Assembly: GCF_947568905.1 (NCBI RefSeq)
Contig: NC_079170.1
Location: 74,400,001-74,464,000 of the forward strand
DNA from: Ostrea edulis
Taxonomy: Eukaryota
DNA length: 64,000 nucleotides
Direction of reading: 5' to 3'
The notes below the pieces were generated by a model that was not told where the DNA came from, made no database searches, and saw nothing but the letters and a program-made list of their open reading frames with translations. Shown piece by piece: positions 7,101 to 64,000 of the stretch. Each line of letters opens with the position of its first letter. The stretch's first letter is position 1. The translations under genes and the position numbers were made by a program.

Positions 7101-8141
7101 AGTTTTANNNNNNNNNNNNNNNNNNNNNNNNNNNNNNNNNNNNNNNNNNNNNNNNNNNNNNNNNNNNNNNNNNNNNNNNNNNNNNNNNNNNNNNNNNNNN
7201 NNNNNNNNNNNNNNNNNNNNNNNNNNNNNNNNNNNNTATTTGAATATGTTCGCCACCATGTATTCTTCAATCTAATTGAAATATGATTTTCTAATTGCCG
7301 GAGCGCAGACTATCGCAGCGATTATGAAACATCTCATTTTCATTAATTAATTTGATTATACCATAAATTCATTTTCGCAAGATGGTGCTTTGATTGGGGG
7401 AAAATAACGATCAGTGATCAATCTCATAACTCCTATAAGGAGTACAAAATAGAGAATGGGGCAAACACGAGTGTCACTTAATCAAATACAACGATCCTGT
7501 AACACACCAGTTGAGCTCATTTGTCAAAATATATCCTGTGTTTAGTATAGAACGTGCGGTGTTTCATACAGACGATTTCATGATAAACGAATTACCACAG
7601 TCGTCAAGGTCACTCACGTATGTTTTCTGGATAGATTGATGAGGGTTGATTACGTTGTCTAATTTCGAAGATTTAATCAGACTAAATTCAATTGAGATAC
7701 ATTGTGCTGGTTTTGAATAGGGAATTAATTTGATTACACAGTTTAATTCCATTTTAAATCGCTAAAACATATTGACCAAAATGTTGTTCTTTTTTTATGT
7801 CTTACGAAGATATTTTCCGGCGATAAATTTGCTCCAGAGTAAATTTTCCTCCTGACAAAACCCCGCATTTACTCAAGATATTTAACTGTACAGCGGATGT
7901 TCTTCGGATATGGTCAATTTCCCCATCTATGTGTTTCCTTTTACGACTTATCAGTTGAAAGTTTATATAATTTGTTTCTGGTGAAATGTTCCGTCATCCG
8001 TGTACCCCTTGACAATTATTGCTCAACTGTTGGTGTGTCGTTTTTGTTTCAGCCATATTAGTCAGCATTTCACAAATTATACGGTCATCATACACTTGTA
8101 ACATTGCAACACACGTTTAACATATCAGTCGCATAACAATC

Positions 8142-20104: not shown

Positions 20105-20240
20105 ATATCTAGCTCCAGTTTTTGGCACTCTAGTTTTCCCTTTAGCTCTTACATGTTTATAGGTATTGTTATTTCGAATTTCCAAAATTTCGGCTTGAGC
20201 ATTACTGAAGAGACATTGTTTGTCGAAATACGCATCTTGT
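20105..20240 (+). mobile_element. Degenerate single copy of the hammerhead-repeat (retrozyme) family
   Basis: GAGCATTA-CTGAAGA-GACAttgttTGTC-GAAA-TACGCATC (core at 20205) with upstream similarity to the 350-bp unit. Confidence 0.7.
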
Positions 20241-23838: not shown

Positions 23839-26800
23839 ATGGGCGATTTTACAGCCAGGAATGCTATTTTCTTGCTCTGCTTTGTTGCTTTCACCTCAGC
23901 AGGTATGGTGTTTTGTTTTTTTTTGTTTGTCAAAATCAAATAATCAAAACTCATCAACTATTGCATTATGAAATTATCATTTCTCATATCATTCTGAATG
24001 TTGTATTCTTTATATGAATATATACATATTGATCACTGGTCGATAATTTCACCTTTTTATCATTCTTTGATTGTATTAAAATTGGATAAACAAATATTAT
24101 CAAATATTGCATGATGAAATTCTTATTCATTACGTCATTTTTTCTTTGACAATTTAATATTGCATATATTCAATGATTTTAAGCTTAGATCATTAAGAAA
24201 ATGTGTTATAGAGTTCCTCATCGACAATATCGTCCTGGTCTTTGGTGATCAGGTCTTCAAACAGTCTGTTGAAAGTCTCATGGGCACGATTTGTGCTCAT
24301 TCGTTAGCTGACCTGTTTCTGTAGTGATATGAGACAACATTCATTCAAAAATTCCTATGTGAGAAGAAAAAGTTTCATGTTGTGGCCTTCAATTTGACAT
24401 TTAAATATATTGTCGATGTTTTATCTTTTACATGTAACAATGGCTAAATATCCATCCATATCTCGATTCGATATTATATCCCTGTGAACTAGAAATAAAA
24501 AAAAACTGAGTCGTTTATTTCTGCTTCATACTTAGATGTGTTATCACTGAAGAGACATTATTTGTCGAAATGCGCATCTGGTGCATCAAAATTTGTACCG
24601 TATAAGTTTTATATTATGACCCCTGTGTCGAGGCCACTGCTGGTGGACTGTTAGTCCCCGACGGTCTCTACAGCCCAGCAGCTAAGTACTTCGTTACTAG
24701 CTTGAAAATACAGATGTATATATAATTGCTGTTATAAAATTTAGAAATTCATTTCAAAATTAAGGATTATCTCCCTCACGCATAACTCTTATCCTTCGAC
24801 GAATTTAACTCCACTTTTTTTGTACACTGTTTTCCCCTATAATAGCTCTAAAACTTCATTGTTATTTCGGATTTCAAACATTTCGGTTGAGCATCACTGA
24901 AGAGACATTGTTTGTCGAAATGCGCATCTGGTGTATCGAAATTGGTACTGTATAAGTGTTATATTGAAAATAGATTTTAACGGCAAACTAGCGACTCAAC
25001 TTTATGTTGAACACTATTGTTTCAAACTCTCTATCGTCAACTTCCCATATTCATGTAGCGATATTCCTTTATCACCTGCATATGATGTTTATATCTCTCA
25101 ATTTATTCAATACACAATAGCTTGTTCTGCATATGATCAGTTTTTAAATCGAAGCAGGTTAATGACATACAGGTTGATGGTGCAGAGGTTTCCAGAGTCT
25201 CGTTTAAAGTTAGTATTTTGCAAATGTTATAGTCGCTATAGCAATCTAGTTTGTCTTTAAAACCTACCATTGGGTTAAATGCTGTTTGACGTGTTTCATA
25301 CAGATTGCTAGGCCATTCTTTGCACACTATTGTTACCGACATAGATTTCCGTTTACCTGATCAATGTATTGGGCTCATGCCGGGTATAACCGGTCGATAG
25401 GGATATTTACTCCTCATAGGCACCTGATCCCGTCTCTTTTATGTCCAGGGGCCGTGTTTGTCCAACTCTCTATTTTGTATTGCTTATAGGAATTATGGGA
25501 TTGATCGCTTCGTTATCATCGCCTCCCTTAAGCGTTCCGAAAATCCTTTAATCGTTATAATGATCTTATTTGCAAATAAAACCTGTCATTAGGTTGAGTG
25601 TTGCTTCTTTGTGTTTCATATCAATTATTGAGCTATTCTATACATTTTTATTTTGACTTAAATTTCCTCCATTTATCAAGACATCAAGACAATAGGTCAA
25701 CAGGCATTCCTCCTAGGCACTTTATTCCCCAACTGATGTTTACAGGGTTCTTTTCCCCCTACCCAACATCTGAAAGATAGTGCAATCATCCGCGGGGATG
25801 TAACTAAATTTACAAGATTCATAAATTTAGAAAGTGATTTTTTCCAGAAATGAGTACGCACATGATCTGGTAAACACTCATAGCTAAAGATAAACTGATG
25901 GTATCCTTACGATTTAAATTGGGATTAAAAAGCGATGATATACTGTTTAATGCCTAGATTTCCCTTTAAGGTATTCCATGTATAATGAAAGGATAATGAA
26001 CAATTTTAAAAGATTTAGATCAACAGAAAAGTTTATTGTTAAATAATGATGAAAATGAAGCTGATGAAATTCACAAGACTGAAAAATGATTAGAAGATGA
26101 CCTTTTTGCACTAAAGACATTTTGGAAGACTTGTCTGCCCTTTGTAACAATAAGACAAATCTAATTTTCTAAAAATGTGTGTGCTCAATGATTGATTTTA
26201 TTTCATATAATTTCATGAAAAGAAAGTAACACTTTACCAAGAGATAATTATCAAAAACATAATTTGTGTTTAAAATATTGTAATAAAACATGCTTTCCCC
26301 GTATACTTCAATGTTAAATTCTAGGTGAAATAAATCAGGCAGTAAACAAAATTTTGAAAATGCCTATGGTGGATTATTTTTATTTGATGAACCCTTCAAA
26401 ATGATACCATGATTACAAATATTCCACCTTCCATTTATTAGGTATGAAATATGGTCATTATACATTGAATACCTTAATACTACGTACAACATTGTCCATT
26501 AACCCCTTTAAACTGTCGGAATTATTTACAAGTGACCTTAGTATATTCCGTCGCTCCTATTGGGAATAACTATGTGGTATCGTTTTTCTATATGATATGT
26601 AAGTATGCGATATCAAATACTTTCAACGAAAAATTCTTACATTCCCGTTGTGCTATTTGGTTGTAAAGGCATACGTATAACCAACGTGATGGATATATTT
26701 GAATTAACCACAAATATATACCTACAAAATTAAGCTTCATGTATCGTATTTTTCTGTGTATTAATTGTTGTGTGTTTTTCATTAGCAAAATTACGATATT

Positions 26801-29550
26801 ACTATAAAAATATACAAATGGTATTTATTAAGTTTTTGGATGTAATTCTATATATATATGATGAATGACTCTTATTATACATTTTATTTAGTGAAATGGC
26901 CAAGGGGAACATATACTTTGGTCAAGCCAAAGACCGGATGTCCTCGTGGGTGGCTGGAGGGATGGAGATGGCAGGACAATGAGGACAAAAATAACAAAAA
27001 CCAAATCGAAGACGGACACCACTTCTTTGGTAAACAGTCACACGACTTCTGAATAAGAACTACAATACTCATGTACACATATAATTTCTCAAAACAGTGT
27101 TTCCCCTCAAATATCGTGACAACGAGCAAGCGTCATGTTTTCAAATTCATCAGCAATATATTACACGAAATGCTAGTGGTAGCGATATTGTGCACGTTTC
27201 TATTCAATGAAGAACCATGTGTGGCTCCGGGTTAGAACATGGATGGAAATTCTCAATTGAAAAGGGTTTGGTTCATCCTTTCTGAGCTCTAGTCATTTGA
27301 AATTGATGATATCAAATATATATTATGCTATGAACGCCTATAAGGAAGGATACTAATTTGTATATGTAGAACACTGGTGAAGATTAGGTTTGAATAGCGA
27401 TGAAGGTGGCAAACATTGCGTACACAGGTTCTGCTTATTTTCTGTAAGGTTTGTGACATTCATATTCCAATAATAACAACAAAGCAAACATATTTAATTG
27501 TTTCTATTGTTCTTTATTTTTTACTACAAATAATGTAGAGTGCATACGAAAAAGATATTTTTGTTCTGTAAGTTATTTCAACGAAACCACTGGGATTCAC
27601 CTCTCTTTGACTTGCCTTTACATTTGGTAATGCTTTACACACTTAAACGATGGTAAACGCAAATAGCCCAAAGTAATCTTAACCTTTTCATGCTAGGTTA
27701 CCAAAGATATATAACTGAATATGATGTACGCTATAATTGCGCACACCTCTGGTGCGTCCAGTGATTTCATGTTTGTACGAATCTTTATTTTGTATTGCTA
27801 TAGGAGTTATGAGATTGATCATTGTTCGTTATCTTCACCTTGCATATGCATGTACATTTATGACATCGTTTGATATCTAGATCATTTGAATATTAAATAC
27901 ATCACTTAACTGTCGCTTATGCGAAACTAAATATGATAATCCTATCTAAATTACATCAATGTAATGCAGAATTTTTAAGGTTGCAAATTATTCTGTTTGT
28001 CCAGGCATCAGTGGAAACAATCCTAGGAATCTGAATTTCTCTTACTGCACAAAGGACCCCAATGATTTTAATGACGAGGGATATTGGCCCAGTGGGAACT
28101 ACTGTATTCTGAAGCATGGAAAGACTTGTCCTCCTGGAGGTAATTGCAGATGGTATATTTATCATCATTCAAAATGTTTTATCACATGTCTTCCCCAAAT
28201 ATAAATTACTTTCTGTACATATTGAAGGTGATTTCGTTTCTTGTCATTGGTTGTAATTACTGTTTTCTCCATTCAATATCTGTCCGATGTCAATTGATGA
28301 ATGAAGCGACTCATGTTATACGATCTCATCCAATTTGGTGCATTTTGCGATTTATAACACATGATGTATCTTAATGCTTTGATCAAGAAATACCTCCAGT
28401 AAAATATATTTCATAATGAAACATCCAAATTTGTTAATACTTGATGTACCATTATTTCTCCAAGATCATAAACTGACAATAGACTTAAGTCAAAATTATA
28501 ATTAGTTGTATACTGTAGGTTTATCAAAAATTCAAATGCAAACATATACTGAAAATATTATTTGTTCATTAAAAGTATTGAAAAAGATAGCTGGATTTGA
28601 AATTAAAGCTTAAGAATATTCTCAGTTTTTGGTGTTGAGGTCAGATATCACCTCCTGTATTTCAAGAAGTTCGTGTTTGCCCAACTCTTTTGTTTCTATT
28701 CCGTATAAGAGTTGTAAATATGTATGATATTGATTACTGCTCCTTATCTTCGCCCTTCACTGAGGAGTACTCCTAATATATCAATATATGTTATGAATCT
28801 ACACAACATCCGGTGTTTAATTCAAGCTTTCCAAAGTGGAACCGTTCATTGGGATGACGAAGACTCTAGAAATAAAAACAGTGCAGGGGGAGAATTGCCT
28901 AGTGGGAAGTTTGGTAGGAATACAGAAATCGACTACTGCTGCAGGTAGTTCTTGAAATATATAGAAAAAGAAAATGAAATGTTGTCATATGCATGGTTTT
29001 ATTTACAAATTGAAATGTAAGCACGGTTACAGCAGAATTTAAGAGAAATGGTCAGATACTTAATAATATGTATCATGTGCACATAATGCATTGGCTCATT
29101 GATACTGTGCTGAAGTTTATTGATAAACGGACTATTATTTTGAAACTCTTATATTTAGCGTCCGTCAATCACAACCGAATTGTGTAATACGCCAAAATGT
29201 CGATATAAAATGTATGTATACATTTCTGTAGTGTATAAACCTATCACAAACAGACTTTCATAAGCTTAACACATTTTTTACATTTTGTTTACGAGTAACA
29301 TATACTGTATTTTAGAAAAGACGGCCCCTACTCTACAGAAATCAGACTTCCAAAATCTAAACCGTTTTATTTGTTGAGACATACCACATACTGTCAAAGG
29401 GTCAGGGGAATGTACGCGAGAGAAGAAACCGTGTTTACAGATGACGAGGACAAGAACAACAAAAATAGCGTGTCCGGAAGTCACCCATACGGACCAAGTA
29501 ATGGAGGAAGGAACTACAAGCTTTTCTATTGTTACTATTGGTCATTGTAA
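23839..29550 (+). CDS. ApeC (apextrin C-terminal) domain secreted protein, paralogue A, 229 aa; coding exons 23839-23902, 26892-27029, 28005-28139, 28827-28944, 29316-29550
   Basis: All introns are GT-AG with compatible phases (1,1,1,2), giving 690 nt in frame. Signal peptide MGDFTARNAIFLLCFVAFTSA; mature VKWPRGTYTLVKPKTGCP...QDNEDK...YCTKDP...WPSGNYCILK...CP...WDDEDS...YCCR...PFYLLR...CQ...TDDEDK...FYCYYWSL*. 8 Cys and three DxED motifs match the known ApeC signature. Confidence 0.92.
24542..24589 (+). ncRNA. Type I minimal hammerhead ribozyme (predicted cleavage after C24578)
   Basis: TATCA-CTGAAGA-GACA ttatt TGTC-GAA-ATGCGCAT-C-TGGTG: intact core, 4-bp stem II, palindromic stem III, AUC triplet, 5-bp stem I. 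Confidence 0.8.
24545..24964 (+). mobile_element. Hammerhead tandem repeat (non-LTR retrozyme / PLE pLTR type), 350-bp period
   Basis: Two hammerhead cores at 24547 and 24897. The insertion splits a Naiad RT fragment, with GTGTTAT at 24538-24544 and 24956-24962. Confidence 0.88.
24887..24939 (+). ncRNA. Type I minimal hammerhead ribozyme (predicted cleavage after C24928)
   Basis: TTGAGCATCA-CTGAAGA-GACA ttgtt TGTC-GAA-ATGCGCAT-C-TGGTGTATCGA: intact core, 10-bp bulged stem I. Confidence 0.85.
27745..27846 (+). mobile_element. Naiad-type 3' tip in gene A intron 2
   Basis: CACCTCTGGTG...ATAGGAGTTATGAGATTGATCATTGTTCGTTATCTTCACCTTGCAT. Confidence 0.75.
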
Positions 29551-36358: not shown

Positions 36359-39300
36359 ATGGGTGCTCTCTTTCTAATGGAGGCGGTGCTTTTAGTTTGT
36401 TTTGTATCAACCGTATCCGCAGGTATGTATTTTTAAAAATTCAAGTAAGTAAATTTCATATTTCGGTAATATCGGTAAATACCAATACAGGTAGTGTTAA
36501 TACTATTGCTCCATGAAATGTCTACAGTGACATACAACTTACATTTTCATAATTTTATAATTCCTTATACCATGTAGATTTACATAAATATCTTTAGATA
36601 CCGGTATGTGATAGTAGGGCTGAAACGACAATTTACATAATAACCTAATAATAGCATTGAATATTAATTTAATTACCAAGAATCACATTCATAATTTTAA
36701 ACGCAAAATCTCTCTAAATTGCCAAACGGTGAGAAGCATGCTGACACGGTAGTTTAAACTTATAAAGTTTATTATTGCTTTCGTAAGAAGCAAGGTAAAC
36801 ACCATCCTGAACGTCATTTGACGCTATTTTATCCCTCATTGAGGTAGGAATAATCAGTGCAAGCCGATCCTGGTATATTTTACTTAACCAGTTTACGACT
36901 AACGTATCGAACCAAAAATTGAAGCAATGAATCGAACATTTATGTGAATCGTTTCAGCCCTATGTGATAGCAGAGACTGTTAAGCTAAATAAAATTGTCA
37001 TATAATGGATTTTCTTGTGCAATGTGATACATTCTCGAAGTATTAATTCAATATAAAACCTTGTGTATATGTTCGCGGTAAACGTAATGCACGGGTTCGA
37101 AATTCCAAACACAAAATATCAACCCAAGGGCTATTCCTATTAATTTTTCTATGTATTTCTTTTTGTACTTCATGTTATTATCATACCTCACAATATTGGT
37201 CACATGGAAAATATGCAAATGAGGCTTTTAGATTGTCTCTGAAAAAAAGTGAAATATACCTAATGACAAATCTTTGATTATATATTTTCATTTAGTGAAA
37301 TGGCCAGAGGGAACATATACGCTGGTCAAGCCAAAGACCGGATGTCCCACAGGGTGGCTGGAGGGATGGAGATACCAGGACAATGAAGATGATGATAACA
37401 AAAATCAATTAGAAGATCAGCACCACTTCTTTGGTAAACAGTCACACACTATGTGGATACGATCTTAAATACCTTCATCTGTAGTTAACATGTGTACTTT
37501 AAGGTATATAAGAAGGGGTTTACTCCAATACCGTGAAAAAAATCAACCGTCGTATTTCAAAAACATTACAAATGCCATGCAAGGCATGACTGCGGTAGTG
37601 ATAGTGTGTGTGCTTCTGTCCATCGTCAAGATTGTGCTATTTTGATTACTGTCACCTTTAGATGTTGATCACTTTCTTAATTTGTTTATTCATTAAAAGA
37701 AAAATCTTACGTCGCATATGGTTAATGTTTAAATTAACATTTTAATGTTTACGCATAATAGCAACTTCAAATATTTCGATTTAAACTAATTTATGCTATG
37801 CTATGTCCCTGTGGATTCAAAATAAATAACACCTCATGGTCCTTCAAATCTGCTTCATACATAGATATTTTATTAAAAATAGATATCAACAACAAACTAA
37901 CAATCAAATGTTATGATAAAAAGGATGTTTTCAGCCTCCTCATTGTCAACTCCCATGTATTTATTACAATGTTCCATTACCACATGTATATGGTATTTAA
38001 TATCTTACCTGATTAAGTACACATGAGCTTCTTCCACGCTTGGTCAGTATTTAAATCACTTAACACTGCTGAAAAACAAGTTAATGATACAGGGGTTTCA
38101 AACACCTTGTGTAAAGTTGGCATTTCGCAAATTGTACGGTCGCTTTAACGACCTAGTTTGTCACTACAGCCCCTCATTGGGTCAAATACTGACTGACGTG
38201 TTTCATACCTATTGTTAGGCCGTTCTTGGCACACTGATTCTGGTTTGGTATCACTCCGTTTATACATGAATCAAGATATGGGGCTCACGGTGGGTGGGGA
38301 CGGTCGACGGAGAATGTTAACTCCTCTTAGGCACCTGATCCCACCTGTGGTATATTCAAGGATCCACGTTTGACCAAATTTCAATGTTATGTTCCTTATA
38401 CGAGTTATAAGATTCATAACTATTCATTATTTTTCCTGTTTATCATGAACAAATACCAATCTTTATGAATGCATGTAAATCACTTGCATACAGAGGATGT
38501 GGAGGTCTACAAGGCATGGAGAGATTAGCAAGTACATTCTTTGTTTCATAAGTTTCATTCTCTCTTGCTAAAGATCTCACTCAATGTAATGTACTCACTA
38601 AAATTCTGCATGAACCTTTATGATATTATTTGATATGTATTTCATTTATACGTTTAAACATATATCTAGCCTCTCGCTTATATGAGGATATATCTGCTAA
38701 ATGAATCTGACATAGATCAATATAATAAAAAAATAATCCACTTACCCAGGTATCATTGGAACCCATCCAAGGGATATGAATTTCTCTTACTGCTCCAAGG
38801 ATCCAAATGATGTTAATGCCGAAGGTAATTGGCCAAGTGGGGACTATTGTATTCTGAAGCATGGAAGTACGTGCCCTCATGGAGGTAATTGAATATATGA
38901 TGTCTATTACTATTGACCAAATTGACATTACTTTGGAAAATTTAGATTATGTCTGTAGACAATTCTTATTAAAGGTAACTATTATTATTTCCCTATATTT
39001 TTTTTTATTCGATTGTAAATGCATATATTCCGTAATGTTGATTTGGTATGATTAAAGAGATGGAATAGTGATATGAATGTACTTTAGAAATCTGCACAAC
39101 ATTTGGTCTTTAATTCTAGGTTTTCAGAGTGGATATGTTTTTTGGGATGACGAAGACTCGAACAATAAGAACAGTGTCGGTGGAGAATTACCAAGTGGAG
39201 GTTTTGACAGGAATACAAGAATAGACTACTGCTGCAGGTACGTTTTAACACCAAGCAAGATGAAAATAGAATCTTACTCGCATTATATGCTTTATAGATG

Positions 39301-40155
39301 AATTAACATGCAAGGGTGTTTACGGTTGTAGTATTTCATTTTTTGTGTGGTCAGAATTTTGATTCCCCGTACTATATACTTCATATGCATGGACTCATCG
39401 ATAATTTGCTAAACTTACTTGTCCCATAGGGATCCGGGTGTGAATAGATCCTTAGTACCGCTTGCTTGTCGTAAAAGACGAATGAGTGGGACGGTCCTTT
39501 TCATGGAATAGTAAAGAAAACCGAGACCCCGTGTCATAGCAGGTCTGGCACGATAAAGATTCCTGACTGCTTAAAGACCTGTGAGCGCTTAACCTAACCT
39601 TAAATTCTTGCGACCTTTCATCGGTAATGGTGACATATCCAGATTCATGAGTGAACAATTCTCGAGTGGAACGTGACACAATATATATAACCAACCAACC
39701 TAAACTTAAAACATTAATATAGTGCTGATCAGTTCGGGCTTTCCTATCCTTAATTTCCTTGCATTACAACATAGTATAATTTGCAGTTCGCCAAACTATC
39801 AATGAATGTCAAAATTTATAGAGTATTATATCTTATACACCTTTAAAAGAAGCAGGCGTTCAAAACCAAACAGATAATTAAACATTTTGTTCATGAGCAA
39901 CCTACTCTGTATTTTAGAGATGACGGTCCCTACTCTACAGCTATCCAACTTCCAACATCGAAACCGTTTTATCTGTTGAGATACAACGACTTCTGCCAAC
40001 AGGTCCAAGGAATGTTGGTGAGAGAAGAAACCGTGTATACAGATGATGAAGACGACAACAATATCAATAGTGTGCACGGAAGTTATCCATTCGGACCGGT
40101 CAGCGGACAAAGGAACTACAAGCTCTTCTATTGTTACTATTGGCCATCGCAATAA
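36359..40155 (+). CDS. ApeC domain secreted protein, paralogue B, 230 aa; coding exons 36359-36422, 37296-37433, 38750-38884, 39120-39237, 39918-40155
   Basis: Same exon sizes as A (64/138/135/118, last 238), GT-AG introns, 693 nt in frame. Signal peptide MGALFLMEAVLLVCFVSTVSA; 8 Cys; DNED/DDED/DDED; ends FYCYYWPSQ*. About 75% identical to A in the mature region by hand alignment. Confidence 0.92.
37800..38445 (+). mobile_element. Naiad-type PLE RT C-terminus plus 3'UTR in gene B intron 2
   Basis: SFKSASYIDILLKIDINNKLT.KCYDKKD.FS..IVN... then the decayed family 3'UTR. Confidence 0.8.
39423..39700 (+). mobile_element. SINE body (Meta-domain-like) in gene B intron 4
   Basis: GTACCGCTTGCTTGTCGTAAAAGACGA...GGGACGGTCCTT...CCCGTGTCATAGCAGGT..GGCACGATAAAGAT...TTCTCGAG followed by an (AACC)n tail. 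Confidence 0.7.
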
Positions 40156-40854: not shown

Positions 40855-41449
40855 GAACTTCTGCTTCATACTTAGATATTTTATTGAAATTAGACATTAA
40901 CGGCAAACTGACAAACTGTATGACAAACGGGATGATTTCAGCTTCTCCATCGTCAACTTCCCACATTTATGTAGCAATATTCCATTATCACCTGCATATG
41001 GTGTTTATATATCTCAACTGATTCGATATGCAGGAGTTTGTTCTGGGTATAGTCAGTTTTTAAATCGAGGTAAGCTACTGACAAACAAGTTGATGGTACA
41101 GGGATTTCAACAGTCTCGATTGAAGTCAGCATTTCGCAAATTCTATGGTCGTTATAACGATCTAGTTCGTCAATACAACCTCGCATTGGGTCAAATGCTG
41201 TCTGACGTGTTTCATACCGATTGTTAAGCCGTTCTTGGCACACTGATTTTGGCTGCGGATAACTCCGTTTACCTGATCAGGATATAGGGCTCACGGCGGG
41301 TGTGACCGGTCGACAGGGGATGCTTACTCCTCCTAGGCACCTGATCCCACCTCTGGTGTCTCCAGGGGTCCGTGTTTGCCCAACTATCTATTTTTTATTG
41401 CTTGTAGGAGTTATGAGATTGATCACTGTTTGTTATCTTCACCTTGCAT
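40855..41449 (+). mobile_element. Naiad-type PLE RT C-terminus plus complete 3'UTR (best-preserved copy)
   Basis: SASYLDILLKLDINGKLT/YDKRDDFSFSIVNFPHLCSNIPLSPAYGVYISQLIRYAGVCSGYSQFLNRGKLLTNKLMVQGFQQSRLKSAFRKFYGRYNDLVRQYNLALGQMLSDVFHTDC* (TAA 41225-41227). No GIY-YIG follows; a ~220-nt UTR ends ATCTTCACCTTGCAT. Confidence 0.85.
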
Positions 41450-49115: not shown

Positions 49116-49612
49116 TCCACTTTTTGGCACGCTGTTTTTGGCTATATTTAGCTCTAAAGCTTCATAGTTATTTCGGATTTCAAACATATCGGTTGAGCAT
49201 CACCGAAGAGACATTATTTGTCGAAATGCGCATCTGGTGCATCAAAATTGGTACCGTATAAGTTTTACATTATGACACCTGGGTCGAGGCCTCTGCTGGT
49301 GGACTGTTAGTCCCCGAGGGTCTCTACAGCCCAGTAGCTAAGTACTTCGTTACTAGCTTGAAAATACGAATGCATATTTAATTGCTGTAATAAAAATTCA
49401 TTTCAAAATTAAGGATTAACTCCCTCACGCATAGCTCTTATCCTTGGACGAATTTGGCTCCACTTTTTGGCACGCTGTTTTTGGCTATATTTAGCTCTAA
49501 AACTTCCTAGTTATTTCGGATTTCAAACATTTGGGTTGAGCATCACTGAAGAGACATTATTTGTCAAATGCGCATCTGGTGTATCAAAATTGGTACCGTA
49601 TAAGGTTTACAT
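49116..49612 (+). mobile_element. Hammerhead tandem repeat copy with both cores mutated
   Basis: Core 1 reads CCGAAGA at 49203; core 2 at 49546 lacks the G of GAAA; ends GTATAAGGTTTACAT. Confidence 0.85.
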
Positions 49613-49734: not shown

Positions 49735-50164
49735 GCAAGGTGAAGATAACGAACAGTGATCAATCTCATAACTCCTATAAGCAATACAAAATAGATAGTT
49801 GGACAAACACGGACCCCTGGACACACCAGAGGTGGGATCAGGTGCCTAGGAGGAGTAAGCATCCCCTGTTGACCGGTCACACCCGTCGTGAGTCCTATAT
49901 CCTGATCAGGTAAACAGAGTTATCCGCAGTCAAAATCAGTGTGCCAAGAACGGCTTAACAATCGGCATGAAACACGCCAGACAGCATTTGACCCAATGCG
50001 AGGTTGTATTGACGAACTAGATCGTTATAACGACCATATAATTTTCGAAATGCTGACTTCAATTAAGACTGTTGAAATTCCTGTACCATCAACTTGTTTG
50101 TCAGTAGCTTACCTCGATTTAAAAACTGACTATACGCAGAACAAGCTCTCGCATATCGAATCAG
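49735..50164 (-). mobile_element. Naiad-type 3'UTR plus RT end, interrupted by the AcademH-like element (resumes 51005-51030)
   Basis: Near-consensus reverse complement of 41020-41449. Confidence 0.85.
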
Positions 50165-51004: not shown

Positions 51005-51246
51005 ATCGAATCAGTTGAGATATATAAACATGCCTTGCAGACGTCTAAATCCTCCGTGTGCACGTGATTAACATTGATAAAGAATGGTGTTTTTCATTAT
51101 GGGAATTCATTTCAAAATTTAGGATTATCTCCCTCATGCATAGCTCTTATCCTTGGACGAATTTGGCTCCACTTTTTTTGGCACGCTGTTTTTGGTTATA
51201 TTTAGCTTAAAACTTCATAGTTATTTCGGATTTCCAAACATTTGGG

Positions 51247-51299
51247 TTGAGCATCACTGATGAGACATTATTTGTCGAAATGTGCATCTGGTGCATCAA
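51247..51299 (+). ncRNA. Type I minimal hammerhead ribozyme (predicted cleavage after C51288)
   Basis: TTGAGCATCA-CTGATGA-GACAttattTGTC-GAA-ATGTGCAT-C-TGGTGCATCAA. Confidence 0.82.
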
Positions 51300-51597
51300 C
51301 ATTGGTACCGTATAAGTTTTACATTATGACCCCTGGGTCGAGGCCTCTGCTGGTGGACTGTTAGTCCCCGATGGTCTTTACAGCCCAGTAGCTAAGTACT
51401 TCGTTACTAGCTTGAAAATACGGATGCATATTTAATTGCTGTTATAAAATTTAGAAATTCATTTCAAAATTTAGGATTATCTCCCTCATGCATAGCTCTT
51501 ATCCTTGGACGAATTTGGCTCCACTTTTTTGGTACGCTATTTTTGGCTATATTTAGCTCTAAAACTTCCTAGTTATTTCGGATTTCAAACATTTGGG

Positions 51598-51650
51598 TTG
51601 AGCATCACTGAAGAGACATTATTTGTCGAAATGTGCATCTGGTGCATCAA
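51598..51650 (+). ncRNA. Type I minimal hammerhead ribozyme (predicted cleavage after C51639)
   Basis: TTGAGCATCA-CTGAAGA-GACAttattTGTC-GAA-ATGTGCAT-C-TGGTGCATCAA. Confidence 0.82.
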
Positions 51651-53260
51651 AATTGGTACCGTATAAGTTTTACATACTACAAAAGCCTACGACGTAAGAT
51701 TATTGATAGTGATAAAACTCACAGGCATGATGCGCGTGTATGCATGTGCATTATTTTTATATTTCCCCTTCCCATTGATTTTTTTTAATTTATCTTGTAA
51801 TCAGATATCTAAACTTGTAATGCATCGACATGCTCAACTTTCTTGACAGCGTGTGCATGCACGTGCATGCACTGATATTTGATTAGTTGATACTAAAATG
51901 TTCATAACTGATTTCAAATAATATGTCAGTAATCAATAATCAAATCAATAATATCAAAGATACTGACCAACATAAGATAGTATATTCAGACGCATCTGGT
52001 GCATCAAAATTGGTACCGTATAAGTTTTACATTTCGCTACACAGACTCATGTCTTCAAACCACGTGTAGAAGATAATGACTATCGTTATCTACATCTACA
52101 AATGATACACTATCATCCTGAAAGGTTTCAAATCGATCTTTTCTGTTCTTTATGAGAACATTACCAGAAAAAAAAAATAATGACTAGTACTAATTGCAAT
52201 GGGACCGTTACAGATGTTCCTCAAACATTTCAATATATAACTATTTTATAGCGCTCAGTCCTTTTGATGCTAAAAGTCACAGACATTTGAATATTAACCA
52301 ATCATTAGTTTCTTTTTATGATGTATAGAATGTGTCTTAAAAATGAAATACAACAGGTGCTAGCCTTAGCCTGGTTTAGGTGAAACATCAAAAATTAATA
52401 TCACAGAAAAAATGATAATACAACCGATTGAATTACGTTTCAGCACAATAAATCATTTCGAAAAAAGGCAAAATTCTATCCAAAAGCAAACCAAAATCTT
52501 CAATATACATGTATTAAAATTGTGTTGCCTCTGGTACTGAAATCCATAAACCTCACCAAGTATTTTTTTGTAAATCTCAGAGGTAGGCTCGTTTATTTTT
52601 ATCCGTTTCCTTACGTTCATTGTAATGAACAAGACCATATTTCTTTTATAGATCCTGTTGACTATATTACCACTCAGTCGAACGTCCAACTGGGACTTTA
52701 GATGTTCATGTGTTGAAAATTAAAGAAACTAAAATGATATATTTTGTAAAACTCTTTACTGCCAATACAACCCAGGATCGCAGCTAGATGAGTTCGATGT
52801 GGAGTCTTGAAATGTCCCAAGACGAAGCCCTGGTATGTTTAGTAGCATCCTGGAAACATGAAATTCATATTTTGGTCCGATCATTCCCATGCAATTCCAT
52901 GCTATTAATATTATAGTGAAATCAGAAACCTTGTTTTTATTCATCATCTAAGGGATCGGTCAATATTTATTGGGGGATTGCAAAATGCAATAGGACACAT
53001 ATTTATTTTTACTTGCATACTGATAGTACTCCAACTTTTTTTTATTTTCAACACTGATAGGACAGCTATATATTTTTTTGGGCAAATGCATCAATGAACA
53101 AAAAATATCATAAGGTATTTCAAACTTTTAATTGAACTATTTTAAAACAATAATACTTAATTGTGTGCATGCTTTATTTCATGTCCAAATTAAATTTACT
53201 AAAAAAAAATTTGCAGTAAAATACTAGCACTTGAATTTTTTAAATATAAAAACATGTAAT

Positions 53261-53792: not shown

Positions 53793-54375
53793 GTGGAGAA
53801 TACTGAGATGTGAAAAATAATTCAACATGAGACAACAATTCAGTAAAACAGTAATTGAAAAATAAGGACTTTAAACAACAATTTAACCAAAAAAAAAGAT
53901 GAAAATAATGAGATTTCTAGACAAATAACCGAACAAACATGACAAAGTAACAAAACTTTTTCAGGAGCTTAAATCCCTCAGCTGATATAACTGGAGATAC
54001 AATTATGAAGAACACTAGAGGTTTTTAAAATNNNNNNNNNNNNNNNNNNNNNNNNNNNNNNNNNNNNNNNNNNNNNNNNNNNNNNNNNNNNNNNNNNNNN
54101 NNNNNNNNNNNNNNNNNNNNNNNNNNNNNNNNNNNNNNNNNNNNNNNNNNNNNNNNNNNNTTAATTGAACATCTAATATAGGACAGGGACTTTTTTGTAT
54201 TTTTAAAAGATAGGAGATGGGTCTTTTTTAAAATGGAAATGTGAAATGCACCGTTCCCAACCCCGCAATAAATATTGACCGATCCCTGAATCATTGATTT
54301 GGATTGGAGACTATGAGATGGTATAACATACAGTGCATTAAGGTATGCTAAGCGAATGCAATTCCGCGGCGAATA

Positions 54376-61800: not shown

Positions 61801-64000
61801 TGTTTGGTAAATTTTATTCTCTCTTACTTAAGATATAACTCAATATAAATTACTCACTAATATTCTACATAAACTTTTTTTTTCATATTGTTAGATATGT
61901 ACATGTATGTCATTTACACATTTAAATGAATACTTACTTCTCGCTAGCGCTTACATGAGGATATACAAGTATTTGCTGGGTGAAAGGCAAATATAACGAA
62001 AAGTGTTCAATCTCATACAACCAATACAAATAGCGAGTTTGGCAAATACGAACCTCTTCATATACCAGAGGTGGAGTTAGGTGAGTAGGAGTAAGTATCC
62101 CCGGTCGACCGTCACACCTGCTGTGTGCGCTCTATCTTGATCAAGTAAAATGAGGCATCCGCAGCCAAAATGAGTGTTCCAAGAACAGCCTAACAATCGC
62201 TATGAAACAAGTCAGTCAGCATTTGTCCAAGTGATAGGTTGTATTGGCAAACTAGTTTGTTATAACGGTCATAGAATTTGTGAAATCCTGCGTTGATTTA
62301 AAAACTGATCGTACGCAGAACAAGCTCTTGCGTATCGCATGAGTTGAGAGTTATAAACATCATATGCAATTCATAATTGAATATTGCTACATAAATATGG
62401 GAAGTTGACGATGGAGAAGCTGAAATCATCCCGTTTATCATAAAGTTAAGTGGCTAGTTCGCCTTTAATATCTATTCTCAATGAAATATCTAAGTATATC
62501 GAATAGACATTAATATATTGGAGCATAACAATTCATTTATCCAGGCATCAATGGTACGAGTCCAAGGGATATGAATTCATTTTACTGCACCAAAGATCCT
62601 ATTACTGTTATTGAGGAAGGTAATTGGCCAAGTGGGAACTATTGTATTCTGAAGCGTGGGAGAACATGCCCTGATGGAGGTAATTAAACATGTCATATTC
62701 CTTACTATTGAAAAACACATTGCACCTCGTAGATAAAGATCCAATATTGTCTGTACACTGAGGAATTCTTATTTCTTTTCATTGATACGGGTAAATGTTT
62801 CCCGCTCATATCTTATCAAATGCATAAAACTGGATTTTTAAAATCATATTTAAATAGTACTTCTTGATACATAATGTAATAGTGATATGAATATGAGTGA
62901 TAAATGTACACAGCATCTGGTCTTTAATTCAAGCTTTCAAGAATGGATATGTTTTTTGGGATGACGAGGATTCGGCAAATAGAAACAGTGCAGGGGGAGA
63001 ATTACCGAGTGGAAGATTTGGCACGAATACAAGAATTGACTACTGCTGCAGGTACATCCTAAAGCTAGGCAAAATGAAAAAAAGGATCTTATCAAAGTGC
63101 ATAATTTTATTTATCAATCAATCATGTGAGGCAAATTGTGTTAAAGTTCACATAAATACTGTAGATTTCTAAATACATATATACGCGAGGGATTTATCAT
63201 CACCAGCGAAATACATTATTCGCTTTGATTTTTCTGCTGTTAAACTCTTGATTAACACAATACAGGCGATTTCATGTTGACGCGATTTGACGTATACGAG
63301 TCATTTCGCAATATTAATTACTCGCTTGAAATAGGACATTTACAGTAGAGTATTTCGACGGTCAGAATCTTGAATTGCCATAATATATACCTCCAATACA
63401 TAGGATCATCGATACTTTGTTCAGGTTAATCATCCCATGGAGGCTTTGATTTGAAAAGATCCTCAGTACCCTTGCTTATTGCGAATGGCGACTAGATGGG
63501 ACGGTCCTTCGAATGACATCGCAAAAACTGAGGCCCTGTGTCACAGCAGGTGTGGCACGATAAAGATCCAACCCTGCTCAAAGGTCATAAGCGTCGGACA
63601 TAGTACTAAATTTTACAGTCCTTCACTGTCAGTGGTGACCTCTCCATATGACTGAAATATTCTCGAGAGTCCCTCTCATATTCAATATTCAATCAATCAA
63701 TCAATCAATCTATTTGTACATTTCTATAGTATTGCATTATATAAGCCTTTATAAAAAGCAGACGTTCACAGAGCAGCAGAGTATTAAACATTTTAATCGT
63801 GAGCAACCTAATCTGTATTTTAGAAGTGACGGTTCCTATTCAACAGCAATTCCCCTTCCAACATTTACGCCATTTTATCTGTTGAGATACACCAGCTTCT
63901 GCCAACAGGTCAAGGGAATGCACGTGAGAGAAGAAATCGTTTATACAGATGATGAGGACGACAACAATAGCAATAATGTACATGGAAGTCATCTACACGG
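55844..64000 (+). CDS. ApeC domain secreted protein, paralogue C, 3'-incomplete; coding exons 55844-55907, 57012-57149, 62545-62679, 62934-63051, 63824->64000
   Basis: Same exon sizes and phases as A and B. Signal peptide MGGSTFRDAIFLLSFASVISA; 7 Cys and all three DxED motifs visible; open frame to the window end (…TDDEDDNNSNNVHGSHLH). Confidence 0.88.
56383..56592 (-). mobile_element. Naiad-type 3'UTR in gene C intron 1
   Basis: Reverse complement match to the family UTR. Confidence 0.8.
57684..61392 (-). mobile_element. Kolobok-like DNA transposon, 3.7 kb, in gene C intron 2
   Basis: TTAA on both sides (57680-57683, 61393-61396) and AG...CT termini. Diverged ~400-450-bp inverted repeats (57684-~58090 vs ~60955-61392). 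THAP-like remnant on - strand ~60540-60720 (KIRKA*LKLMR...RLYSKHFVD*TPTKKNPY). It splits a + strand Naiad copy (57573-57683 and 61393-61722). Confidence 0.62.
58585..58752. mobile_element. Small MITE nested in the Kolobok-like element
   Basis: CAGTGGGGGATTTAG ... CTAAATCCGTCACT inverted ends with subterminal G/C runs. Confidence 0.55.
61981..62500 (-). mobile_element. Naiad-type RT end plus 3'UTR in gene C intron 2
   Basis: Decayed reverse complement of 40860-41449. Confidence 0.78.
63430..63710 (+). mobile_element. SINE body (Meta-domain-like) in gene C intron 4
   Basis: GTACCCTTGCTTATTGCGAATGGCGACTA...GGGACGGTCCTT...GTGTCACAGCAGGTGTGGCACGATAAAGATCC...TTCTCGAG followed by an (AATC)n tail; same intron and orientation as in gene B. 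Confidence 0.7.

What the first reader, a model, noticed from the sequence alone, without database searches (positions are those of the whole stretch)
24542..24939. Two intact hammerhead ribozymes in the sense strand of an ApeC gene intron
Seen: intron 1 of ApeC gene A (23903-26891, + strand) contains two + strand type I hammerheads 350 nt apart. Both have a complete CUGANGA/GAAA core, stem II, a palindromic ATGCGCAT stem III and an AUC site. Established: such minimal PLE/retrozyme hammerheads cleave efficiently as dimers, and metazoan non-LTR retrozymes yield small circular RNAs. Inference: ApeC-A pre-mRNA could self-cleave and release a 350-nt RNA (24579-24928). That would couple expression of a probable pattern-recognition gene to circRNA production, or could dampen gene A relative to B and C.
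Basis: partly seen in the sequence, partly recalled or inferred. Interest (0 to 1): 0.8.

Follow-up and report, generated by a model that had tools for sequence, protein, structure and literature searches.

The report
Ordinary hammerhead retrozyme in ApeC intron
The two self-cutting hammerhead RNA motifs are real, but they belong to one ordinary 423-base copy of a mobile repeat present more than 10,000 times in this oyster-like genome, a kind of element (animal retrozyme) described in 2020, and nothing shows that it regulates the immune-type gene it landed in.

Summary
Both type I hammerhead motifs are at the stated coordinates, with cleavage predicted after 24578 and 24928. The exact motif is not expected by chance. 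Rfam Hammerhead_1 matches both over its full length, but below its gathering score.

They are the two ribozymes of a single 423-nt insertion (24543-24965). This is a 73-nt, 5'-truncated partial unit followed by one full 350-nt unit. The family has at least 10,359 exact-motif hammerheads across the 895-Mb genome. Its copies share a fixed 3' end about 36-37 nt past the cleavage site and have variable 5' ends. That is the partial-tandem, 5'-truncated signature of Penelope-like-element retrotransposition. A paralogous empty site at 40858-41081 shows a clean insertion into an older repeat.

The element does lie sense in intron 1 of ApeC paralog A. The exon 1/exon 2 structure is shared by three paralogs.

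"Two intact" is only partly right. The upstream ribozyme is cut off inside stem I and keeps 4 of about 10 native pairing bases.

This is a new member of a known kind: non-LTR retrozymes, as in the mussel. This scan has already found the same family many times elsewhere in this genome, including other sense-intronic copies. Coupling to ApeC expression is untested speculation, and read-through transcription is already the published general model.

The parts
24543..24965 (+). Whole retrozyme insertion (423 nt): a 5'-truncated partial unit plus one full unit
   Evidence: BLAST of the region against the window and 30 genomic loci gives the same boundaries. The flanks show no further similarity to the unit. 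The flanks align contiguously to an empty paralogous site.
24543..24615 (+). 73-nt 5' partial unit (pseudo-LTR-like direct repeat) carrying upstream hammerhead A1
   Evidence: Direct repeat D1, 92% identical to 24893-24965, spacing 350. It corresponds to unit positions 315-350 plus 1-37.
24541..24584 (+). Hammerhead A1, with cleavage predicted between 24578 and 24579. The core, stem II, stem III and site are intact, but the 5' strand of stem I is truncated at 24543.
   Evidence: Exact motif. RF00163 scores 23.5 bits over model 1-45, with one non-standard stem I pair. The constrained hammerhead fold is -1.5 kcal/mol against an MFE of -13.8.
24579..24928 (+). 350-nt cleavage-to-cleavage monomer (37% G+C, no ORF of 45 aa or more)
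   Evidence: Its fold is not unusually stable: -71.1 kcal/mol, z -1.23.
24880..24942 (+). Hammerhead A2 with a complete native stem I. Cleavage is predicted between 24928 and 24929.
   Evidence: Exact motif. RF00163 scores 29.7 bits, E 3.4e-6, at 24891-24934. The constrained fold is -7.2 kcal/mol, with a stem I of 6 bp, a bulge and 8 bp.
24929..24965 (+). 37-nt 3' tail after the cleavage site. This is the fixed 3' terminus of the family's insertions.
   Evidence: Most of the 30 sampled insertions end at unit position 32-43, most often 36-37, while their 5' ends range from position 13 to 315.
23839..23902 (+). ApeC gene A exon 1 (start codon plus signal peptide, 64 nt, phase 1), followed by a GT donor at 23903
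   Evidence: Paralogs B and C have the same 64-nt exon with a GT donor.
23903..26891 (+). Intron 1 of ApeC gene A (2989 nt, against 873 and 1104 nt in paralogs B and C), enlarged by nested repeats
26892..27030 (+). ApeC gene A exon 2, the start of the ApeC domain
   Evidence: Pfam PF16977 ApeC, E 7e-8, profile positions 1-53. Later exons match profile positions 91-133 and 157-208.
24966..25524 (+). Older interspersed repeat into whose 5' edge the retrozyme inserted
   Evidence: There are many copies on both strands of the window at 70-85% identity. The ORF inside it has no Pfam match.
40858..41081 (+). Paralogous empty site: the same older repeat without the retrozyme
   Evidence: The joined flanks of the element align across this site without interruption. 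There is only a 3-nt indel at the junction and no target-site duplication.
51104..51675 (+). Second retrozyme insertion (1.6 units, intergenic). Both ribozyme cores are intact, but the stem III loop has changed from GCGC to GUGC.
   Evidence: RF00163 scores 27.4 bits at 51251-51294.
49116..49612 (+). Third retrozyme insertion (1.4 units, intergenic), with both ribozymes inactivated (core CUGA changed to CCGA; G of GAAA deleted)

Best explanation
The feature is one ordinary insertion of this genome's abundant, roughly 351-nt non-coding hammerhead repeat. The repeat is an animal non-LTR retrozyme, a non-autonomous element most likely copied by Penelope-like-element (PLE) reverse transcriptase.

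Shown here:
- The insertion spans 24543-24965. It consists of a 73-nt, 5'-truncated partial unit followed by a full 350-nt unit.
- The family's copies share a fixed 3' end about 36-37 nt past the ribozyme cleavage site and have variable 5' ends.
- The insertion landed cleanly, without a target-site duplication, in an older repeat inside intron 1 of ApeC paralog A. It lies in the sense orientation.

Inferred from the published retrozyme model:
- When the intron is transcribed, the downstream ribozyme (complete) can cut after 24928.
- The upstream ribozyme is truncated in stem I and cuts poorly, if at all, after 24578.
- This would be a by-product of read-through transcription, as at hundreds of other loci. 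It is not a device regulating ApeC-A.
- The mussel ribozyme cleaves at about 0.1 per min. That is slow against transcription of the remaining 2 kb of intron and its splicing, so any effect on the mRNA is probably small.
For: Motif and ribozyme identity:
- The exact motif occurs twice in the window, with 0 expected.
- RF00163 gives full-length matches at 29.7 and 23.5 bits.

Family size and shape:
- There are 5208 forward and 5151 reverse exact-motif hits in the 895-Mb genome and 0 for the reversed control. Many pairs are spaced 345-353 nt apart.
- The central 261 nt has 2683 candidates, the nearest 94-96% identical.
- 3' ends are fixed and 5' ends vary (positions 13 to 315) across 30 loci and the window copies.

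This insertion:
- An empty paralogous site exists at 40858-41081.
- The unit does not extend into the flanks, and its G+C is 37%.
- There is no ORF of 45 aa or more in the unit.
- The gene model is conserved in three paralogs.

Literature:
- PMC7229834: mussel repeats of 350-390 bp, about 5000 type I hammerheads, circRNAs up to about 1% of RNA, kobs about 0.1 per min.
- PMC7761336: no own promoter, read-through transcription.
- PMC8557442: PLE insertions are 5'-truncated partial tandems with a 30-40 bp tail.
- 10.64898/2026.07.22.740005: retrozymes derive from PLE pseudo-LTRs, and 42-44% of Xenopus copies are intronic.
Against: - Neither ribozyme reaches Rfam's gathering score (34 bits). Scans of the whole window and of 901 nt reported nothing.
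- No cleavage, transcript or circRNA data exist for this species here.
- No autonomous PLE with a matching 3' end or ribozyme was found among 32 sampled PLE loci.
- The monomer's predicted fold is no more stable than shuffles (z -1.23), unlike the 'highly self-paired' circles described for other retrozymes.
- Homology to the mussel family could not be tested, because no mussel sequence was available.
Confidence: 0.87

Rival explanations
1. The sense-strand ribozyme pair makes ApeC-A pre-mRNA self-cleave. This either couples expression of the gene to production of a 350-nt circRNA or lowers gene A output relative to paralogs B and C.
For: - The element is sense in intron 1 of gene A only. B and C have short introns without it.
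- Both catalytic cores are unmutated.
- There is a precedent for an intronic self-cleaving ribozyme tuning its host gene: the Cpeb3 ribozyme (PMC10919898).
Against: - It is one of more than 10,000 family ribozymes, and of an extrapolated roughly 1,300 arrays with two or more exact ribozymes (10 arrays in the first 6.66 Mb of contig 1).
- The upstream ribozyme lost most of its stem I 5' strand.
- Decay looks neutral: 6 of 73 sites differ between the two repeats, and 3 of the 6 are CpG-type changes.
- One change against about three expected in the 72 core nt is not significant, and the locus was picked because the cores are intact.
- The related mussel ribozyme is slow (PMC7229834).
- No expression data are available.
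Confidence: 0.05
2. A dead relic. Neither ribozyme is active in the pre-mRNA context, because alternative folds or the truncated or weakened stem I prevent the active fold. Nothing is released, and the element is inert intron filler.
For: - The hammerhead fold costs 7.5 kcal/mol (A2) and 12.3 kcal/mol (A1) relative to the MFE of the local sequence.
- In A1 a flank-derived helix sequesters the cleavage site in the MFE fold.
- Cofolding of the two motifs did not give a double hammerhead.
- Rfam scores are sub-threshold.
Against: - Nearest-neighbour energies ignore the hammerhead's tertiary core.
- All 15 core positions, the G10.1-C11.1 pair, the A15.1-U16.1 pair and C17 are present in both copies.
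- A2 keeps a long stem I.
- A closely comparable mussel element cleaves in vitro and accumulates as circles in vivo (PMC7229834).
Confidence: 0.07
3. A chance motif, or a local tandem duplication (satellite-like) rather than a retrotransposed element.
For: None beyond the small size of the motif. Only 1.2 units are present.
Against: - 0 matches in 100 shuffles of the window and 0 for the reversed control genome-wide, against 10,359 hits.
- The copies are dispersed on all large contigs, with a shared 3' end and variable 5' ends.
- An empty site exists.
Confidence: 0.01

Closest known systems
Metazoan non-LTR retrozymes, especially the Mytilus galloprovincialis family (Cervera & de la Pena 2020, PMC7229834)
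   Same: - A type I hammerhead whose stem III is 2 bp capped by a tetraloop.
- A unit of about 350 nt (mussel 350-390 nt).
- Thousands of dispersed and short-tandem copies.
- Low G+C (37%).
- No ORF, LTR, PBS or PPT.
- Bivalve host.
   Different: - The host is a different, oyster-like genome (ten large contigs).
- Sequence homology to the mussel family was not testable here.
- No RNA evidence is available.
- This copy's monomer is not predicted to be unusually self-paired (z -1.23).
- The copy number is about twice the mussel's reported figure of about 5000.
Penelope-like elements and their pseudo-LTR hammerheads (Cervera & de la Pena 2014; Craig et al. 2021, PMC8557442; Li et al. 2026 preprint, 10.64898/2026.07.22.740005)
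   Same: - Insertion architecture: a full unit preceded by a 5'-truncated copy, forming a short direct repeat that carries the hammerhead.
- A fixed 3' end and a tail of about 37 nt.
- A palindromic stem III that could pair two ribozymes.
- PLEs with GIY-YIG endonuclease are abundant in this genome (at least 1102 candidates).
   Different: - There is no RT/endonuclease ORF, so the element is non-autonomous.
- None of the 32 PLE loci sampled shares sequence with it, so the partner is unidentified.
Conserved intronic self-cleaving ribozymes of amniotes: intronic hammerheads (de la Pena & Garcia-Robles 2010) and the CPEB3 HDV-like ribozyme (PMC10919898)
   Same: A self-cleaving ribozyme on the sense strand of an intron, which could in principle compete with splicing.
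   Different: - Those are single-copy, deeply conserved motifs with evidence of function.
- This one is a decaying copy of a 10,000-member repeat, with no evidence of conservation at the locus.
Plant LTR retrozymes (PMC4918200)
   Same: Two hammerheads in direct repeats bracket a non-coding unit that is released and circularised.
   Different: - Plant elements have type III hammerheads, LTRs of about 350 bp, PBS and PPT motifs and 4-bp TSDs, and they are mobilised by Gypsy elements.
- None of these features is present here.

Membership tests
Hammerhead ribozyme, type I (Rfam RF00163) | Conserved catalytic core C3-U4-G5-A6-N7-G8-A9 and G12-A13-A14 | tested here: met
   CUGAAGA and GAA(A) are exact in both copies.
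Hammerhead ribozyme, type I (Rfam RF00163) | Three helices around the core with stem I open-ended, a G10.1-C11.1 pair, an A15.1-U16.1 pair, and cleavage after H17 | tested here: met
   - Stem II is GAC/GUC with a 7-nt loop.
- Stem III is A-U and U-A plus a GCGC loop.
- Position 17 is C.
- Stem I is complete in A2 (6 bp, a bulge, then 8 bp).
- In A1, stem I has only 4 native bp plus fortuitous flank pairs.
Hammerhead ribozyme, type I (Rfam RF00163) | Score at or above Rfam's gathering score (34 bits) | tested here: not met
   Scores are 29.7 bits (A2) and 23.5 bits (A1), full-length with E 3.4e-6 and 4e-4 on 79-nt stretches. The whole-window and 901-nt scans gave no hit.
Hammerhead ribozyme, type I (Rfam RF00163) | Self-cleavage activity | not testable with these tools
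   This needs in vitro transcription of the locus with core-mutant controls.
Metazoan non-LTR retrozyme | Type I hammerhead within a short repeat unit of 150-450 bp that occurs as monomers, dimers and multimers | tested here: met
   The unit is 350 nt. Sampled arrays range from a quarter of a unit to about 2.3 units, with motif spacings of 345-353 nt.
Metazoan non-LTR retrozyme | Non-coding, G+C below 50%, no LTR, PBS or PPT | tested here: met
   G+C is 37%. The unit has no ORF of 45 aa or more. The only terminal repeat is the 73-nt partial unit. PBS and PPT were not searched for specifically.
Metazoan non-LTR retrozyme | High copy number, dispersed through the genome | tested here: met
   There are at least 10,359 exact-motif ribozymes, on both strands and on all large contigs.
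Metazoan non-LTR retrozyme | Expressed as monomeric linear and circular RNAs | not testable with these tools
   No transcript data are available. This has been shown only for coral, mussel and axolotl (PMC7229834).
Non-autonomous derivative of Penelope-like elements | Insertions 5'-truncated with a common 3' end, often as partial tandems forming a pseudo-LTR | tested here: met
   3' ends cluster at unit positions 32-43, and 5' ends range from 13 to 315. The window copy is a 73-nt partial unit plus a full unit.
Non-autonomous derivative of Penelope-like elements | Sequence similarity of its 3' end or ribozyme region to the pseudo-LTR of an autonomous PLE in the same genome | tested here: inconclusive
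   32 PLE loci were sampled out of at least 1102 GIY-YIG candidates. None was similar. Two carry different minimal hammerheads with an AGCGCU palindrome.

The most novel reading that the evidence does not exclude
Transcription of ApeC paralog A feeds this locus's retrozyme unit into the circRNA pool and/or is attenuated by intronic self-cleavage. A transposon-borne ribozyme would then act as a paralog-specific brake, or an immune-inducible circRNA source, in a pattern-recognition gene cluster.
Probability: 0.05. Interest if true: 0.55.

Novelty: new member of a known kind. Interest (0 to 1): 0.14.

Why it matters
As it stands, the finding is ordinary. It adds one more copy to a bivalve retrozyme family of a kind characterised in 2020, and this scan has met the same family repeatedly in this genome.

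Two small points have some value:
- The family shows a sharply fixed 3' end, 36-37 nt downstream of the ribozyme cleavage site, with variable 5' truncation. This constrains where reverse transcription starts on the RNA and fits mobilisation by Penelope-like elements.
- Sense-intronic copies with two unmutated ribozymes give natural test cases for whether slow self-cleaving ribozymes in introns cost the host gene anything.

Only a genome-wide orientation analysis or expression data would make the second point interesting.

Tried and rejected
- **Rfam on larger stretches.** The whole window at gathering score and a 901-nt stretch at E<=10 gave no hammerhead hit. Only 79-nt stretches, which use laxer filters, revealed the sub-threshold RF00163 matches.
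- **Folds.**
  - Free folds of the two motifs do not give the hammerhead as the MFE.
  - Cofolding did not give a double hammerhead.
  - The 350-nt monomer is not unusually stable.
  - These energy models ignore tertiary structure, so I give them little weight.
- **Autonomous partner.** The 30 best GIY-YIG loci, plus a young 3.7-kb PLE family with a 787-aa ORF, share nothing with the retrozyme.
- **Target-site duplication.** None was seen at this copy or at the sampled copies.
- **Extension of the unit into the flanks.** An apparent short match (TTATTTC) is not better than shuffles.
- **Literature and supplement search for the ribozyme sequence.** No hits, so homology to the mussel family remains untested.
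- **Unbiased sampling of copies through the central region.** The fraction of family copies with intact ribozymes is therefore known only from the window: two pairs intact out of seven sites.
- **Pfam on the ORF of the older host repeat.** Nothing. One search was a coordinate error.
- **Spliced models.** The exon 1-exon 2 join was checked for reading frame only, inside a local script.
- **Assembly gaps.** The N stretches (7108-7236 and 54032-54160) were left alone.
Full report
**Observation**

The + strand carries two copies of a 32-nt motif at 24547-24578 and 24897-24928. The motif reads CUGAAGA, then GAC, a 7-nt loop and GUC, then GAAA, then UGCGCAUC. None was expected in 100 dinucleotide-preserving shuffles of the window.

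Read as a type I hammerhead, every core position is present:
- C3 to A9 and G12 to A14.
- The G10.1-C11.1 pair at the base of a 3-bp stem II.
- An A15.1-U16.1 pair.
- C17 as the cleavage-site base.

Stem III is two pairs (A-U, U-A) closed by GCGC. The eight bases AUGCGCAU are self-complementary.

Rfam reported nothing for the whole window at gathering score, nor for a 901-nt stretch at E<=10. On 79-nt stretches, where the filters are laxer, RF00163 (Hammerhead_1) matched over its full length (model 1-45):
- Downstream copy: 29.7 bits, E 3.4e-6.
- Upstream copy: 23.5 bits, E 4e-4.

Both scores are below the curated 34 bits. The identification therefore rests on the exact core plus these sub-threshold matches, not on a family-level pass.

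**What the two motifs belong to**

The motifs sit in a 73-nt direct repeat (24543-24615 and 24893-24965, 92% identical, spacing 350).

The exact motif occurs 5208 times forward and 5151 times reverse in the window's 895-Mb, 52-contig assembly. The reversed control gives 0. Among the first 100 places listed (6.66 Mb of contig 1), ten arrays have two or three exact motifs 345-353 nt apart. That extrapolates to roughly 1,300 such arrays genome-wide.

The central 261 nt of the unit, which holds no ribozyme, has 2683 first-look candidates. The nearest copies are 94-96% identical.

Aligning the 350-nt monomer to 30 fetched loci and to the window gave a clear pattern:
- Insertions end at unit positions 32-43, most often 36-37.
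- Their 5' ends fall anywhere, at positions from 13 to 315.
- They span from a quarter of a unit to about 2.3 units.

This is the signature of reverse transcription from a defined 3' end with 5' truncation. It matches the partial-tandem, pseudo-LTR architecture described for Penelope-like elements, including a 30-40 bp tail (PMC8557442).

The window copy fits exactly. It is a 73-nt truncated unit followed by one full unit, 24543-24965. No similarity to the unit continues into either flank.

The flanks align without interruption to a paralogous copy of an older interspersed repeat at 40858-41081. That copy lacks the element, there is only a 3-nt indel at the junction, and there is no target-site duplication. 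So this is a discrete, nested transposon insertion.

The window holds further copies, all on the + strand:
- 51104-51675: both cores are intact, and the stem III loop is GUGC.
- 49116-49612: both ribozymes are mutated.
- Fragments at 20165-20236 and 51997-52033.

**Gene context**

Three ApeC paralogs lie on the + strand. In each:
- A 64-nt first exon encodes Met plus a signal peptide and ends in phase 1 at a GT.
- An AG acceptor precedes an exon that opens the ApeC domain (Pfam PF16977, E 7e-8 to 8e-12 over three exons of gene A).

Intron 1 is 2989 nt in gene A, 873 nt in B and 1104 nt in C. Only A's intron holds the retrozyme, and it is in the sense orientation. The join was checked for frame only in a local script.

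**How intact are the ribozymes?**

The family's stem I pairs about ten bases upstream of CUGA (unit positions 309-318) with positions 1-11 after the cleavage site, with a bulged A.

- *Downstream ribozyme.* It keeps all of this. Two of its substitutions convert pairs to wobble or new pairs. Its hammerhead-constrained fold is -7.2 kcal/mol.
- *Upstream ribozyme.* It begins at the truncation point, so only AUCA is native. The flank happens to offer five more pairs beyond a 3-nt bulge, but the constrained fold is only -1.5 kcal/mol. The free fold instead buries the cleavage site in a flank-derived helix. Its Rfam score is 6 bits lower.

"Two intact hammerheads" is therefore an overstatement. One is complete, and one has an intact core but a crippled stem I.

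**Age and constraint**

The two 73-nt repeats would have been identical if they were copied from one RNA. They now differ at 6 sites, 3 of them CpG-type transitions. The nearest genomic relatives differ by 4-6%. About three hits would be expected in the 72 core nucleotides, and one is seen. This is not significant, and the locus was chosen because its cores are intact. Nothing indicates selection at this locus.

**Mechanism**

The published model applies:
- Retrozymes lack their own promoter and are transcribed by read-through.
- They are circularised by a host ligase (RtcB in vitro).
- They are copied back into DNA, probably by PLE reverse transcriptase (PMC7229834, PMC7761336, 10.64898/2026.07.22.740005).

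At this locus, ApeC-A transcription would be one such read-through source.

Invertebrate retrozyme hammerheads with a 2-bp stem III and a tetraloop are reported to cleave as monomers, the mussel one at about 0.1 per min. That rate is slow against transcription of the remaining 2 kb of intron and against splicing. From general knowledge of ribozyme-in-intron experiments, only fast ribozymes abort co-transcriptional processing. I therefore expect little effect on the mRNA. This is inference.

Intronic retrozymes are common elsewhere: 42-44% of copies in Xenopus, though mildly under-represented per base (10.64898/2026.07.22.740005). The best precedent for a host effect is the conserved Cpeb3 ribozyme (PMC10919898). 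That ribozyme is single-copy and conserved, unlike this one.

**Earlier notes of this scan**

The same family has been reported many times elsewhere in this genome. Follow-ups called it an oyster retrozyme with over 10,000 copies and PLE-like insertion. First readers also flagged several other sense-intronic copies in unrelated genes. My copy number and insertion-architecture results were obtained independently and agree with these notes. The other intronic cases are unchecked leads, consistent with my extrapolation that this arrangement is frequent.

**Verdict**

The regulatory reading is unsupported and unlikely. Interest is low.

Noticed in passing
window 24929-24965, and loci L001-L030: Family insertions end sharply 36-37 nt downstream of the hammerhead cleavage site, not at the site itself, while their 5' ends are scattered. 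This points to a fixed start of reverse transcription on the RNA. It resembles the 30-40 bp 'tail' of Penelope-like elements.
   Followed up: partly
window 24966-25524, 40879-41444, 37868-38417, 62287-62482, 49738-50161 and others: An unidentified interspersed repeat of about 570 nt has many copies on both strands of the window at 70-85% identity. The retrozyme is nested at its 5' edge. The 109-aa ORF inside it has no Pfam match.
   Followed up: partly
window 23839-29547, 36359-40143 and 55844 to beyond 63992 (+): Three tandem ApeC (apextrin C-terminal domain) paralogs share the same exon 1/exon 2 structure. Their intron 1 lengths are 2989, 873 and 1104 nt.
   Followed up: partly
L061 (G000:C1:110499000-110508999) and L062 (G000:C2:32783000-32792999): A very young Penelope-like element family with a 3.7-kb unit, copies more than 99.6% identical, and a 787-aa open frame with a C-terminal GIY-YIG domain. 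It occurs in tandem and inverted arrangements. No hammerhead motif was found by my scan.
   Followed up: partly
L034 at about 665 (+) and L041 at about 475 (-): Two PLE-associated loci carry different minimal hammerhead-like motifs with an AGCGCU palindrome as stem III. These are distinct from the retrozyme's AUGCGCAU type.
   Followed up: no
window 20165-20236, 24543-24965, 49116-49612, 51104-51675, 51997-52033: All five retrozyme copies or fragments in this window lie on the + strand, the same strand as the ApeC genes. Genome-wide the two strands are equal (5208 against 5151). With so few copies this may be chance.
   Followed up: no
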